DNA from: Ostrea edulis | Lineage: Eukaryota | Length of the DNA stretch: 64,000 nucleotides | Direction of reading: 5' to 3' | Assembly (NCBI RefSeq): GCF_947568905.1 | Contig: NC_079166.1 | Coordinates: 61,876,001-61,940,000 of the forward strand | Part shown: positions 1 to 10,989 of the stretch, one piece after another | Numbering within the stretch: position 1 is the first letter of the stretch | How the letters are laid out: each line of letters starts with the position of its first letter | Position numbers and translations under genes: made by a program | Notes under the pieces: generated by a model | The model's database searches: none | Told to the model about the DNA's origin: nothing | What the model saw: only the letters and a program-made list of their open reading frames with translations

Positions 1-229
1 CTTCTGTTGGATGGCTTCTACGTCGTCTCCTCTGATAAGAGCGATAAGGGCGATAAGGGCGGTCGTAATCATAATATCTCTCTTGATAGACAGGACGCTG
101 TTGTTGTTGTTGTGCGGGGGCTCCACCTAATAATCCGCTGATCAGGGGACCCGCCACTTTGCTGGCTATTCCCAACAGGGCTCCAAGCCCGTGACCCTGC
201 TGCCGTATTAAACCTTTATGGTAGTGCAT
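1..229 (-). CDS. Small basic/Gly-rich putative virion core protein, 3' end outside the window (not in ORF track)
   Basis: Manual translation from ATG at 229: MHYHKGLIRQQGHGLGALLGIASKVAGPLISGLLGGAPAQQQQQRPVYQERYYDYDRPYRPYRSYQRRRRRSHPTE..., open to the window edge. TATA box GTATAAAAA at 267-275. Confidence 0.8.
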   Translation of the reverse strand, partial: MHYHKGLIRQQGHGLGALLGIASKVAGPLISGLLGGAPAQQQQQRPVYQERYYDYDRPYRPYRSYQRRRRRSHPTE

Positions 230-256
230 CTTGATGTAAATGAACTTCGTTAGGGG

Positions 257-400
257 TTACACCCGCTTTTTATACTTTTTACGCCGTCTCTTTCTCTTCT
301 TTCCTTGGCCCGCTTGACCCACAATGGCATTGGCAATCCACGGAATGAGAAACCAGATTCCGTGTCCTTTCTGGCGTCTGACTCCTCGATGGTACTTCAT
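257..400 (-). CDS. 47-aa highly basic micro-protein, putative virion core protein (not in ORF track)
   Basis: Manual translation MKYHRGVRRQKGHGIWFLIPWIANAIVGQAGQGKKRKRRRKKYKKRV*. It fills the gap exactly between neighbouring genes, and its N-terminus is paralogous to the ORF starting at 229. Confidence 0.72.
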   Translation of the reverse strand: MKYHRGVRRQKGHGIWFLIPWIANAIVGQAGQGKKRKRRRKKYKKRV

Positions 401-403
401 CTT

Positions 404-1399
404 TCAATACACTTTGCGGAAATGAAGTTTGACTAAGGAGCGCCCATTTAAAAACCCCATAGGACGCCCTAAAGAATTCATGATGTGTACCTCAATGGTA
501 TCGAAATATTTCTTACTCAGTTTCAAATATTCGGCTCGAATCGGTTCCCAACGGGCTTGTTGTCGATCGTCGTATTGAGCCGTACAGGGGACGACTCTCA
601 ATAATTTCAATTTGTTGGTACCCACCACTTGAGGATCCACAATGTCACAATACACATACATGGCTTTCAGATTGTCGTAGACATCCATGGTCGTGTTCCC
701 CAAGTAATTCACGTTGATCCATTTCGTCATGGTTTCATCGCCCAGGATCATTTTGTCACTATCCAGACCTAGCTTGTACGCTAAGGGCGTAGGGAAACGA
801 ATGCACATGGGGGTGGATCTCAGTGCTTTCCCATTAAACTGATACTCGACACGATCGTACTCGGGGTGATACACTAAGAGCTGGTTGTTCCCCTCGTCGT
901 TAGGATTCCCTAACTCGCTCCATACTTTCCACAGGGTTCTCCTTAAGGCTGCGTTGATTTCATTGATTAACGCCAAAGGTTGTGTATAAGCTCCGGGTCG
1001 GAAGTGAATGCGAATGATATCGAAGGGAAATAAACTATCCCCTCCCGCAAAGAGATGGGCCCATGGCGTCAGAGCCCAGGGGACCACCACCTCACACCCG
1101 GCCATCGTGACTTTGCCCATAGTCTCTGTCTTAAATCTTTCCCATTTATAAGTGTTGGGATCTTGGACATGTTGCGTATACGGATCTGGAATGAGAACGT
1201 CCACATAAGCCTCGCTATCCGATACGTTTTGTAAGCTGGCCGAGTACATCATTTCGGTCAATCCGGCTTCCCATTCTCCATCCGTTAAGTCCATGGTGTG
1301 TGGCAATAACGTTTTAAATTGAGCCGTCGTATTCGTCGGAAACGATTCCATCGACCCATCACTCAACAGAGTCATGTAAAACCCTTCTCCTCCAGCCAT
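404..1399 (-). CDS. Maverick minor capsid protein (penton, single jelly-roll)
   Basis: N-terminal FYMTLLSDGSMESFPTNTTAQFKTLLP and C-terminal MYVYCDIVDPQVVG...LLRVVP...KLHFRK motifs typical of Polinton minor capsid proteins. Confidence 0.85.
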   Translation of the reverse strand: MAGGEGFYMTLLSDGSMESFPTNTTAQFKTLLPHTMDLTDGEWEAGLTEMMYSASLQNVSDSEAYVDVLIPDPYTQHVQDPNTYKWERFKTETMGKVTMAGCEVVVPWALTPWAHLFAGGDSLFPFDIIRIHFRPGAYTQPLALINEINAALRRTLWKVWSELGNPNDEGNNQLLVYHPEYDRVEYQFNGKALRSTPMCIRFPTPLAYKLGLDSDKMILGDETMTKWINVNYLGNTTMDVYDNLKAMYVYCDIVDPQVVGTNKLKLLRVVPCTAQYDDRQQARWEPIRAEYLKLSKKYFDTIEVHIMNSLGRPMGFLNGRSLVKLHFRKVY

Positions 1400-9500: not shown

Positions 9501-10547
9501 GTGAGTGTAGCCAACATCGCAATAATCGCAATAGTATTTGTTTTCCGTCACTCCAGGCATAGACACAATGGCATCGTAATGCTCGTTATCCAGCAGGATA
9601 TTCAAACAAGTCCCGTGCCCCGGTCCTTTGTAAATAGGTTCCAGTCGTAAACGAGTTGTATTCGTTTTGAATTGAAATATTTTCAATCGATACTGTGGGG
9701 CGAGCGCGTGCTGTAATTGCTCCCATTCACGCGGCCCACACGGGTGGTTCATAACACACCCAGCTTGTTCCATCAAGGCTATCGCTTCTCGTTTCTGGTC
9801 GAGCGTTTTGAAATCCCCTTTTCTCATGCGTAACCATTTCGTTTCCCATGCCGGGTCGTTTGATTTCTGGCTGTGTAGACGTGCTACCACAATAGCCCGG
9901 GACAAGCAGAGAGAATCCTCAGGATTTTGAATGCGAACGATCGCTCTCTTGGAGTTTTTGAATTTTTCCTTTTCCACATGCAGATGTTTTTTCTTAGTGC
10001 ACCCGCTGCCTTGTGGATATTTGACATGGAAAAAATCCATCTGCACTGACCCGTCGGTGATTAGGAATTCCTTTTTAGATTGCTGGACGGATTCTATTTT
10101 GTTCAGAATTTTGTCCTCGTTGAGTTGATTGGACTGCGTAAATTCGTACCAAATAGCTGAATCCAGAGACGGGTGCCGAATATTTAAACGTAGATAATCA
10201 TTGGGATTGCACTGCATTTCCTGTTTCACATTTTTTAACATATCCCGGAAGAGCCGACGAATGAAGGCTGTATTTTCTTTCTCTGGAATAGGTTTGAAGG
10301 CAACATTGTAGACATTTTCCTTGACTTTAAATTTCCGTGATTGACGTCCTCGTTCCAGTTGAATTTTGTAATAATCCGAAATGAGTTTCTTTTTCCCCCC
10401 TCCCCGCTGTAAATACTGTAGTCGCCGTTGATTCTCTCTGCGGAGTTGTAATTCACGCTGCCGTTGTCTGTTCAGCTGATCATTCAAAATTCTCAATCGC
10501 TGTTCAATATAACTCCGTGGAAGTCCACTAGGTAACTTGTCTGACAT
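6585..10547 (-). CDS. polB: Protein-primed family B DNA polymerase (1320 aa) with N-terminal OTU-like/zinc-finger region and inserted Vsr-like nuclease domain
   Basis: Exonuclease motifs YYDFE, HNFKGYDGQF and YCISDV. Polymerase motifs YVDVCSLYP, KLFLNCLWGKF, LYFDTDS and PKNY. Vsr-like VDGYD...YEFYGCYWHGC. Confidence 0.97.
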   Translation of the reverse strand: MSDKLPSGLPRSYIEQRLRILNDQLNRQRQRELQLRRENQRRLQYLQRGGGKKKLISDYYKIQLERGRQSRKFKVKENVYNVAFKPIPEKENTAFIRRLFRDMLKNVKQEMQCNPNDYLRLNIRHPSLDSAIWYEFTQSNQLNEDKILNKIESVQQSKKEFLITDGSVQMDFFHVKYPQGSGCTKKKHLHVEKEKFKNSKRAIVRIQNPEDSLCLSRAIVVARLHSQKSNDPAWETKWLRMRKGDFKTLDQKREAIALMEQAGCVMNHPCGPREWEQLQHALAPQYRLKIFQFKTNTTRLRLEPIYKGPGHGTCLNILLDNEHYDAIVSMPGVTENKYYCDYCDVGYTHIEDHRTVCPHRCSFCLADTPCTPDGTQTNCPHCKGFFRNAACYQNHLKPYSSNTMTTVCSLMGRCNQCQKWMSKKLLKRHACGGQTECRICRKVVTMPHHCFVQTKPKPKKEKEEEEELKIYIYYDFECSQENGIHIPNLCVAERVCQHCDSVDIDKPCSHCEGFGSQRRFLFQGPDTLKQFMEWLLQSETDEQGHVELKHDEATIIAHNFKGYDGQFILNYLVHTACIKPTVILNGSKILSMQVLGLRFIDSYNFLPFALAKMPSAFGLTELKKGYFPHFFNTTENQQYVGPYPAAHFYNPDDMSTANREAFYTWYHQQEGKVFDFQKEFLAYCISDVDILRRCCAHFKSTLFDLVEVDPFQESITFASTANLAYRRGFMVENTIAIIPNMGYRPARRYSAKACRWFAWLEHQHHCIRHARNGGEVTLGPYTVDGYDEESRIVYEFYGCYWHGCPTCFPNLLTDMHPHRVQHTYQDLYLDTLKRASALEDQGYTVVSIWEHEFDRQTQTNADLQEFLQGVDIQDPLNPRDALYGGRTNATRLYCEEGDMRYVDVCSLYPYVLKYKPFPVQHPQVITSHFTDVRDYFGLIRCRVLPPRELYHPVLPYKTGGKLLFPLCRTCAEQRNLGPDERCQHTDSERSLTGTWVTTELHKALDLGYRLDRIYEVWHFEKTSDHLFRAYINTFLKIKQEASGFPEDCQTAQQQQHYIEEIQQREGIAMNPADIQKNPVRRTIAKLFLNCLWGKFAQRLQLPKSLYLTEEEELQQKLQDATLEVKGIELLENRERPECDMMLINYQEKEEFLEDCPFGNVVLACFTTAHARLHLYETLQPLGERVLYFDTDSIIYQHDDTQFNPTIINSLGGWTDELGGDRIIKYMSGGPKNYAYETQGGKSVCKVKGLTLNYRASRVVSLDTLEKMLKGEEEEVHVRYPHFIQRTRQHDVRTIPLVKKYRMVYDKRHRIHDYDTLPYGY

Positions 10548-10610
10548 GATATCGAAAGTGATAACGCGAATTGTGTATTGCGTTTATATACTTATTGTGA
10601 CGTCATAGAA
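10535..10610 (-). promoter_or_regulatory. Putative polB promoter: CRE/ATF palindrome plus TATA box
   Basis: TGACGTCA at 10598-10605. GTATATAAA (minus) at 10583-10591, 36-44 nt upstream of the ATG at 10547. Confidence 0.55.
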
Positions 10611-10799
10611 AAGCAGGTTTTTTCACAACGTCAATAACACTCTAAATTAATTAAATTGTTCTTTAATAAACATGTCAACTTAAAACCTTGTGTTATTCTT
10701 TTAGATTTAATACACAGGATTTCACAGGATTTCACTGGATTTTATACCGATTTTCAGAAAAATAGCAGGAACTCATTCCAGGAACTCAAAGCGAAAGTA

Positions 10800-10989
10800 C
10801 CGCATCATAGACCACCGGCCATAGCCCCAGTCTATTCACCCGCTCTACAACCCCTGCTGGGGTTGACCCCGTCCTAGTGCACTCCGTTGACCCCGACACC
10901 GCTTGACCAATCAAAAACGCCCTTACTTCACCTCATTTGCATAAAAAGTGCACTCAGTTGAACTCCCTATCGGGAGGCCTTATACTACT
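10800..10989. promoter_or_regulatory. Right terminal (inverted repeat/origin) region of the Maverick
   Basis: Terminal ACTACT, hairpin CTCCC-TATC-GGGAG (10963-10976), perfect octamer ATTTGCAT (10935-10942), CCAAT (10907-10911), GTTGACCCCG twice (10862, 10886). The partner TIR is outside the window, so the extent is unverified. Confidence 0.6.

What the first reader, a model, noticed from the sequence alone, without database searches (positions are those of the whole stretch)
1..10989. Apparently intact, recently integrated Maverick/polintovirus arm with 12 uninterrupted co-oriented ORFs
Seen: no stop, frameshift or nested repeat across 11 kb in a window otherwise saturated with insertions. 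Integrase DDE, ATPase Walker A/B and polymerase catalytic motifs are all intact, and genes overlap or abut as in a viral genome. Inference: a young, potentially virion-competent element. The major capsid protein and adenain-like protease should lie just left of the window.
Basis: partly seen in the sequence, partly recalled or inferred. Interest (0 to 1): 0.75.

Follow-up and report, generated by a model that had tools for sequence, protein, structure and literature searches.

The report
Intact oyster Maverick arm carrying IAP
The left 11 kb of the window is the unbroken right arm of a Maverick/Polinton virus-like element integrated in an oyster genome (probably Ostrea edulis); it carries an apoptosis-inhibitor gene and is a well-preserved example of a known kind of element, not a new kind.

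Summary
Twelve co-oriented minus-strand ORFs (3,483 codons, no stop) cover 97.8% of bases 1-10,547. They encode:
- a protein-primed family-B polymerase (1,320 aa)
- a BIR+RING inhibitor of apoptosis (IAP)
- an A32-like packaging ATPase
- an rve integrase with a chromodomain
- a penton (vertex capsid) protein, identified here by fold
- seven proteins that matched no family or structure; only ORF150 was searched for relatives, and it has some

Catalytic residues of the polymerase sit in columns invariant across 22 relatives. The closest named proteins are from Ostrea edulis (99% for polymerase and IAP); other oyster lineages are 60-84% identical.

The element abuts a CpG-depleted NHL-repeat pseudogene fragment. 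Its right end lies somewhere between about 10,962 and 11,400 and cannot be fixed without the left repeat.

Youth is inferred, not shown. With no disabling change, neutral divergence since integration would be under about 0.2-0.3%.

No major capsid protein or protease is in the window.

Mavericks are already catalogued in O. edulis, and IAP homologues are reported in adintoviruses. This is a new member of a known kind, of moderate interest.

The parts
1..229 (-). Small ORF that runs off the left edge of the window (at least 76 aa). It has a Gly-rich hydrophobic stretch, then a Gln run and an Arg-rich tail.
   Evidence: N-terminus paralogous to the next ORF, pairwise E 4e-7. Coding-frame score is positive. 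No Pfam match.
257..400 (-). Small, very basic ORF (47 aa, 36% Lys+Arg), a tandem paralogue of the ORF to its left. Possibly a core or pX-like virion protein (inference).
   Evidence: No Pfam match.
404..1399 (-). Penton (single jelly-roll vertex capsid protein), 331 aa, full length compared with relatives.
   Evidence: AlphaFold model pLDDT 74. Foldseek top hits are the mavirus penton (E 5e-9), the Sputnik penton and adenovirus penton bases. Relatives are 325-342 aa.
1515..1967 (-). ORF150: a conserved protein of unknown function with a confident alpha/beta fold. It did not match any protease.
   Evidence: 31 representative relatives, most of them 100-200 aa long. Model pLDDT 84. No significant structural match in PDB or BFVD. 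No PDB sequence match.
1960..2247 (-). ORF95: a small predicted membrane protein with one long hydrophobic stretch. It overlaps both neighbouring ORFs.
   Evidence: No Pfam match.
2214..3299 (-). Integrase, 361 aa: rve catalytic core plus a C-terminal chromodomain.
   Evidence: Pfam rve E 1.5e-11 and Chromo E 4e-8. Aligns with a foamy-virus integrase core, including the second Asp (D143) and the Glu (E176).
3281..4051 (-). ORF256: unknown function, no cysteine, Pro/Ala/Ser-rich middle.
   Evidence: Coding-frame score is positive.
4048..4506 (-). ORF152: basic, function unknown. It probably starts at an internal Met, giving 109 aa. Weakly similar to part of ORF302.
   Evidence: (E 0.012).
4418..5326 (-). 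ORF302: very basic (25% Lys+Arg), with a Lys/Ser/Pro repeat and a weak C-terminal C2H2 zinc-finger match. A DNA-binding or core protein is the guess.
   Evidence: (sub-threshold C2H2 matches).
5340..5993 (-). A32/FtsK-type genome-packaging ATPase. It is 212 aa from the first ATG at 5978; the listed ORF starts at a GTG.
   Evidence: Pfam Pox_A32 29.8 bits against a cut-off of 22.8. P-loop at residues 27-34 and hydrophobic-Asp-Asp at 94-99.
6019..6549 (-). Inhibitor of apoptosis, 176 aa: one BIR domain plus a C-terminal RING.
   Evidence: Pfam BIR E 1e-15 (positions 1-69 of 70) and RING E 3e-12. 89 PDB IAP chains matched. Relatives of 175 aa at 76% and 60% identity; 157 of 158 residues identical to an O. 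edulis model.
6585..10547 (-). [quoted passage not shown] It has a conserved N-terminal Asp/Cys...His region, Cys/His zinc clusters and an inserted nuclease-like segment (about residues 761-880).
   Evidence: Pfam PF03175 E 3e-57. Relatives of 1,310-1,345 aa. 162 invariant columns, including the exonuclease and polymerase acidic residues. The profile hits phi29 polymerase. Weak DUF559/REase matches for the insert.
10548..10961 (.). Non-coding terminal region upstream of the polymerase gene, with several short direct repeats. This is the minimum extent of the right terminal repeat.
   Evidence: CpG o/e 0.97.
11023..11398 (.). Tandem array of 42 bp x9. Its affiliation is unresolved: it is either the outer part of the element's terminal repeat or a linker of the host exon.
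   Evidence: Variation among copies shows no codon-position bias, and CpG o/e is intermediate at 0.80. It shares a palindromic motif with the polymerase upstream region.
11400..12211 (+). Neighbour, not part of the element: the C-terminal NHL-repeat part of a TRIM-like host gene. It has one in-frame stop and its N-terminal half is absent.
   Evidence: Pfam NHL. Aligns with residues 343-589 of the intact B-box+NHL paralogue at 32551-34320. CpG o/e 0.51.

Best explanation
Bases 1 to roughly 10,960-11,400 are the right arm of an integrated Maverick/Polinton, an adintovirus-like element with an Alpha-type (PF03175) polymerase. The host is an oyster, most likely Ostrea edulis.

Shown:
- All genes lie on one strand, are tightly packed and are open.
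- They include the replication pair (protein-primed polymerase and rve-chromodomain integrase), a packaging ATPase, a penton capsid protein and a BIR-RING inhibitor of apoptosis.
- The arm ends beside the C-terminal fragment of a TRIM-like NHL gene that is itself interrupted and CpG-depleted.

Inferred:
- The element replicates as linear DNA by protein priming.
- It integrates through its integrase, with the chromodomain steering it to chromatin.
- It packages DNA into an icosahedral capsid whose vertices are made of this penton.
- It uses the IAP to delay death of the infected cell.
- The insertion is evolutionarily young, or its genes were kept open by recent descent from an active lineage, because nothing is broken in 3,483 codons.

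The window does not tell whether the whole element is complete.
For: ORF train and coding density. Domains. Penton fold. Polymerase catalytic columns invariant in 22 relatives. Integrase core alignment.

Full length against relatives for polymerase, penton, IAP and ORF150. All seven unannotated ORFs score as coding in their own frame only.

Host identity: 783 of 789 and 157 of 158 residues identical to O. edulis proteins. The background GC of 36.6% compares with a published 35.46% (PMC9679248).

Youth: with zero disabling events, neutral divergence would be below about 0.13-0.29% at 95%. Element CpG o/e is 0.98 against 0.51 in the adjacent host fragment.

Host flank.
Against: The left arm, both terminal repeats and the target-site duplication were not seen. 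No major capsid protein or protease is in the window.

The age bound assumes neutrality and an assumed indel-to-substitution ratio. CpG content may reflect methylation targeting rather than age.

None of the five window proteins looked up is in the protein collection as an exact sequence. The 99% O. edulis models are shorter (789 and 158 aa). It is therefore unclear whether they are another copy, another allele or differently modelled genes.

The N-terminal OTU-like domain reported for this polymerase class was not detected by Pfam or PDB sequence searches.
Confidence: 0.8

Rival explanations
1. The right end of the element is not near 10,989 but at about 11,400. On this reading the 42-bp x9 array is the outer part of the terminal repeat, and the element sits inside the coding exon of the TRIM-like gene, directly before its NHL domain.
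For: Homology to the intact paralogue starts only after the array. Variation among the repeat copies shows no codon-position bias. CpG o/e of the array (0.80) is nearer the element's than the NHL part's (0.51). The array repeats a palindromic motif also found upstream of the polymerase gene. An open frame through a 42-bp tandem unit is expected by chance about half the time, and both strands are open across it.
Against: The array is in frame with the NHL part and encodes a Ser/Pro-rich repeat that would suit a protein linker. The CpG counts are small. No second copy of the terminus is available for comparison.
Confidence: 0.4
2. The arm is intact but the element as a whole is defective: the left arm with the major capsid protein, protease and left repeat is missing, rearranged or degraded. 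The locus would then be a remnant, not a complete provirus.
For: Only one arm is visible. No capsid or protease gene is in the window. The closest O. edulis protein models are shorter than the window's proteins, which may mean that degraded sibling copies exist. Published annotation counts 751 Maverick pieces totalling 2.4 Mb in O. edulis, an average of about 3 kb, so most are fragments (PMC9679248).
Against: An ORF runs off the left edge, so the element continues beyond base 1. The perfect state of 3,483 codons makes severe decay a few kb away less likely.
Confidence: 0.25
3. The insertion is old, and its frames have been kept open by selection on the host (co-option) or by gene conversion among copies, not by youth.
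For: Polymerase lineages 80% identical keep 89% similar residues, which shows long-term purifying selection in the family. An IAP could in principle benefit the host.
Against: Selection for host benefit would not plausibly preserve all twelve genes, including capsid, packaging and integration genes. CpG is undepleted, unlike the neighbouring host fragment.
Confidence: 0.1
4. The junction with host DNA is an assembly artefact, and the 11 kb derive from free viral DNA present in the sequenced tissue.
For: The base composition steps sharply from 45% to 37% GC. No target-site duplication could be checked.
Against: Similar proteins are annotated on O. edulis chromosomes, and Mavericks are normal residents of mollusc genomes (PMC10294476). 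There is no gap or N at the junction.
Confidence: 0.03

Closest known systems
Maverick/Polinton elements of animals, 'Alpha' adintoviruses (Starrett et al. 2021, PMC8502044)
   Same: PF03175 protein-primed polymerase with a long N-terminal extension, rve integrase, A32-type ATPase, penton, small basic virion-type ORFs and an accessory anti-apoptotic gene. That paper reports IAP and Bcl2 homologues in adintoviruses.
   Different: The PLA2X, gasdermin-like and 'Oncoid' genes described there were not found in the window. The OTU-like fold of the polymerase N-terminus was not detectable by sequence here. The hexon and adenain genes were not seen.
Mavirus and Sputnik virophages
   Same: The penton fold is the best structural match. 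Mavirus also pairs a protein-primed polymerase with an rve integrase (established knowledge).
   Different: About 10% sequence identity in the penton. Virophages depend on giant viruses of protists, whereas this element sits in an animal genome and carries an IAP.
Adenoviruses
   Same: Penton base fold, protein-primed family-B polymerase, small basic core-type proteins (the last is an inference).
   Different: Adenoviruses have no integrase and are not known to carry an IAP (own knowledge). The genome organisation differs. The polymerase gave no PDB hit as a single sequence, and its profile reached only phi29 polymerase.
Virus-borne IAPs of baculoviruses, entomopoxviruses and oyster herpesvirus (own knowledge), and the expanded host IAP family of bivalves (PMC8917759, PMC7831173, PMC13159474)
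   Same: BIR plus C-terminal RING architecture. O. edulis annotation names the near-identical copy 'death-associated inhibitor of apoptosis 2-like'.
   Different: It is very short (176 aa, a single BIR) and sits between the polymerase and ATPase genes of a mobile element, not in a host gene cluster.

Membership tests
Maverick/Polinton (polintovirus, adintovirus) | [quoted passage not shown] | tested here: met
   Pfam E 3e-57. Catalytic columns invariant in 22 relatives. The profile reaches phi29 polymerase.
Maverick/Polinton (polintovirus, adintovirus) | Retroviral-type (rve) integrase, usually with a chromodomain | tested here: met
   rve and Chromo both above the Pfam cut-offs. Core aligned with a solved integrase.
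Maverick/Polinton (polintovirus, adintovirus) | A32/FtsK-type packaging ATPase | tested here: met
   Pox_A32 29.8 bits against a cut-off of 22.8. P-loop and Asp-Asp present.
Maverick/Polinton (polintovirus, adintovirus) | Penton (single jelly-roll minor capsid protein) | tested here: met
   Foldseek hits to the mavirus, Sputnik and adenovirus pentons, probability 1.00.
Maverick/Polinton (polintovirus, adintovirus) | Double jelly-roll major capsid protein | tested here: inconclusive
   None of the window's ORFs matches one or is large enough. The gene may lie left of the window, which was not examined.
Maverick/Polinton (polintovirus, adintovirus) | Adenain-like cysteine protease | tested here: inconclusive
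   No Peptidase_C5 match for any ORF. ORF256 has no cysteine. The ORF150 fold matches no protease. ORF152, ORF302 and ORF95 were not folded. The gene may lie left of the window.
Maverick/Polinton (polintovirus, adintovirus) | Long terminal inverted repeats and a short target-site duplication | not tested
Only one end is in the window.
Alpha adintovirus polymerase class (OTU domain plus PF03175; PMC8502044) | N-terminal OTU-like cysteine protease domain on the polymerase | tested here: inconclusive
   Asp211, Cys214 and His323 are invariant in 22 relatives.
Inhibitor of apoptosis (IAP) proteins | At least one BIR domain; in many members a C-terminal RING | tested here: met
   BIR covers positions 1-69 of 70 and RING 3-48 of 49 in the Pfam models. 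89 PDB IAP chains matched.

The most novel reading that the evidence does not exclude
The 176-aa BIR-RING gene is a stable cargo gene of an oyster Maverick lineage that is still circulating in flat oysters. Copies of it are being counted as host genes: O. edulis models are named 'death-associated inhibitor of apoptosis 2-like' and 'BIRC7-like'. If so, part of the much-discussed expansion of IAP genes in bivalves, attributed to dispersed or transposition-type duplication, would be virus-borne. The hint is that about-175-aa IAPs exist at 99, 93, 76 and 60% identity, and the polymerase (99, 80-84, 74, 65-68%) and penton (92, 65, 60%) show comparable series. Linkage of these proteins in the relatives was not examined.
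Probability: 0.3. Interest if true: 0.55.

Novelty: new member of a known kind. Interest (0 to 1): 0.33.

Why it matters
Mavericks are suspected to be real viruses of animals. A copy with every visible gene open, in a farmed and disease-prone oyster, is a useful reference for asking, from sequence and expression data, whether such a lineage is still active.

The practical lesson concerns annotation. Element-borne genes (IAP, polymerase) appear in the O. edulis gene set as ordinary host genes, which can inflate counts of immune and apoptosis gene families. Nothing here changes what is known about how Mavericks work.

Tried and rejected
- **ORF150 as the missing protease.** The family is small but real and the model is confident. 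No structural or sequence match to any protease or to anything else was found. Rejected; function remains open.
- **OTU domain at the polymerase N-terminus.** Not detected by Pfam on 22 relatives or by a PDB profile search. Left inconclusive.
- **Other copies or fragments of the element in the window.** None at DNA or protein level.
- **tRNA or Rfam features**, including the tRNA-like stretch at about 12,330-12,600. None found.
- **Exact look-up of five window proteins in the protein collection.** I judged this a protein search, not the fetching of a virus. None is present, so it gave no copy-number information.
- **Fixing the right boundary** from CpG content and from the codon-position pattern of repeat variation. 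Inconclusive.
- **NHL fragment as cargo of the element.** Rejected as less likely, because it is interrupted and CpG-depleted while the element is neither.
- **Search caps.** The three word searches went to the penton, polymerase and IAP. The integrase, ATPase and ORFs 256, 302, 152 and 95 were therefore not compared with relatives.
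Full report
**What is there.** Twelve ORFs follow one another on the minus strand between bases 1 and 10,547. In the direction of transcription, right to left, they are:
- a 1,320-aa polymerase (6585-10547)
- a 176-aa BIR+RING protein (6019-6549)
- a packaging ATPase (5340-5993; the first ATG gives 212 aa)
- ORF302, ORF152 and ORF256
- a 361-aa integrase (2214-3299)
- ORF95 and ORF150
- a 331-aa protein (404-1399)
- a 47-aa basic ORF (257-400)
- a related ORF that runs off the left edge (1-229)

Together they make 3,483 codons without a stop and cover 97.8% of the stretch. 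Neighbours range from an 89-base overlap to a 115-base gap. The longest open run (1,320 codons) is far beyond shuffled sequence (mean 119, maximum 198). The opposite strand has a tenth as many codons in long open runs. GC is 45% here against 36.6% in the rest of the window. The window has no N and is not human.

**What the genes are.** Pfam gives PF03175 for the polymerase (E 3e-57), rve plus chromodomain for the integrase, Pox_A32 for the ATPase (above its cut-off) and BIR plus RING for the 176-aa protein. The BIR+RING protein also matches 89 solved IAP chains.

The 331-aa protein had no sequence match to any family or structure. An AlphaFold model built on 24 relatives (pLDDT 74) matches the mavirus penton (E 5e-9), the Sputnik penton and adenovirus penton bases. 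The capsid module therefore begins inside the window.

In an alignment of 22 polymerases down to 38% identity, 162 columns are invariant. They include:
- the acidic pairs of the exonuclease part (D475/E477, N559/D564, Y683/D687)
- the polymerase part (D903 with S906-P909, K1085...N1089...G1093, D1189-T1190-D1191, K1231-N1232-Y1233)
- an N-terminal D211/C214...H323 set
- a series of Cys/His clusters
- residues of an inserted segment (about 761-880) with weak nuclease-family matches

The integrase core aligns with a solved foamy-virus integrase, including D143 and E176.

The two small left-hand ORFs are paralogues. ORF302 and ORF152 are very basic and weakly alike. ORF95 has one long hydrophobic stretch. 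ORF150 has a small family of relatives, most 100-200 aa long, and a confident fold (pLDDT 84). It has no significant structural or sequence analogue.

All seven unannotated ORFs score as coding in their own frame and not in shifted frames, using a codon model trained on the five annotated genes.

**Host and relatives.** The best named polymerase hit is an Ostrea edulis protein, identical at 783 of 789 residues. A second O. edulis lineage is 80% identical over the full length. Saccostrea polymerases are about 74% identical and Crassostrea virginica 65-68%.

The IAP is identical at 157 of 158 residues to an O. edulis model named 'death-associated inhibitor of apoptosis 2-like', on the same 88.7-Mb chromosome as the polymerase hit. 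Further IAPs are 93% identical (a 209-aa model matching 57% of the query), 76% and 60% (both 175 aa).

The penton's best hit is 92% identical (unnamed short contig). Its best named hit is an O. edulis protein at 60%.

None of the five window proteins looked up is in the collection as an exact sequence. The two 99% models are shorter than the window's proteins (789 against 1,320 aa; 158 against 176 aa). I did not examine why.

The host is therefore O. edulis or something very close. The published genome has 35.46% GC and 751 annotated Maverick pieces, 0.28% of the assembly (PMC9679248). Mavericks are reported in all mollusc genomes analysed (PMC10294476).

**The right end and the neighbour.** Upstream of the polymerase gene, 10,548-10,961 is non-coding and full of short direct repeats. 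A 42-bp x9 array follows at 11,023-11,398.

From about 11,400 to 12,211 the plus strand encodes the C-terminal NHL-repeat part of a TRIM-like protein (Pfam NHL). It aligns with residues 343-589 of an intact B-box+NHL paralogue at 32,551-34,320. This fragment has one in-frame stop, lacks the N-terminal half and is CpG-depleted (o/e 0.51, against 0.98 in the element and 1.05 in the intact paralogue).

Whether the 42-bp array belongs to the element's terminal repeat or to the host exon is unresolved. It is in frame with the NHL part. But an open frame through such an array is expected about half the time, both strands are open across it, variation among copies has no codon-position bias, and its CpG o/e is intermediate. 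It also repeats a palindromic motif found upstream of the polymerase gene.

**Age.** In these ORFs, 5.5% of possible single-base substitutions would create a stop. With an assumed indel-to-substitution ratio of 0.05-0.2, finding no disabling event in 3,483 codons is unlikely (P below 0.05) once neutral divergence exceeds 0.13-0.29%. This is an inference that assumes neutrality after integration. The contrast with the interrupted, CpG-depleted host fragment next door points the same way. So do the 99% relatives, although with the high heterozygosity of oysters (own knowledge) these could be alleles of the same locus.

**How it most likely works.** The following is inferred from the families named. 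The element replicates as linear DNA by protein priming and integrates through the rve integrase, with the chromodomain directing it to chromatin. The A32-type ATPase packages the DNA into an icosahedral capsid whose vertices are made of the penton. The small basic proteins and ORF302 are candidates for DNA-condensing core proteins. The BIR-RING protein would bind pro-death factors or caspases and mark them through its RING, delaying death of the cell that expresses the element. None of this was tested here beyond the presence and completeness of the domains.

**Comparison with what is known.** This matches the Maverick/Polinton kind and, within it, the 'Alpha' (PF03175) adintovirus polymerase class. 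The paper defining that class already notes IAP and Bcl2 homologues among adintovirus genes, and pX-like basic domains (PMC8502044). The OTU-like polymerase N-terminus described there could not be confirmed by sequence methods. Major capsid protein, protease, terminal inverted repeats and target-site duplication were not seen. The window's ORFs exclude a capsid-sized unknown protein, and no ORF matched a protease. Verdict: a new, well-preserved member of a known kind.

- I did not use the look-up of encoding contigs, the search for related loci, collection scans with the DNA search, or accession fetches to obtain the DNA left of the window or sibling copies.
- As a result, terminal-repeat identity, copy number at the DNA level, dN/dS and presence/absence could not be assessed.
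- No spliced model was needed.
- No breaks were found in the element's genes.

Noticed in passing
window 32551-34320 (-): Intact 589-aa TRIM-like gene (B-box plus NHL repeats). It is a paralogue of the interrupted NHL fragment beside the element, with CpG o/e 1.05 against 0.51 in the fragment.
   Followed up: partly
window 19118-22281 and 26515-29705: Tandem duplication with about 7.4 kb spacing and 95-97% identity. It carries paired coiled-coil ORFs (19299-19946, 26696-27340) and the start of a fibrinogen C-terminal domain (28176-28646). These are probably duplicated fibrinogen-related genes.
   Followed up: partly
window 13322-13847, 39426-40523, 49740-51104, 52577-53039, 60616-61747, 63345-63968: Six satellite or minisatellite arrays with units of 29, 38, 28-29, 34, 166 and 39 bp. 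The 166-bp unit also has solo copies near 59.3-59.6 kb.
   Followed up: no
window 27748-28149 / 31108-31522; 44060-44972; 46753-47812: Inverted-repeat pairs of 82-96% identity that look like MITEs or the ends of small DNA transposons. No transposase ORF was seen.
   Followed up: no
window ~12330-12600: A stretch that resembles a tRNA-derived SINE by eye, just after the host NHL fragment. ARAGORN and Rfam report nothing there.
   Followed up: partly
window 7908-8267 (polymerase residues ~761-880): A segment inserted between the exonuclease and polymerase parts. It has invariant Glu/Asp/His/Cys residues and weak DUF559/REase matches, and one relative hits the RAP domain. It is possibly a nuclease domain conserved in this polymerase class.
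   Followed up: partly
proteins P0032 and P0152 (Ostrea edulis annotation): Element-borne polymerase and IAP genes are annotated as ordinary host genes ('uncharacterized protein', 'death-associated inhibitor of apoptosis 2-like'). Both models are shorter than the window's proteins.
   Followed up: partly
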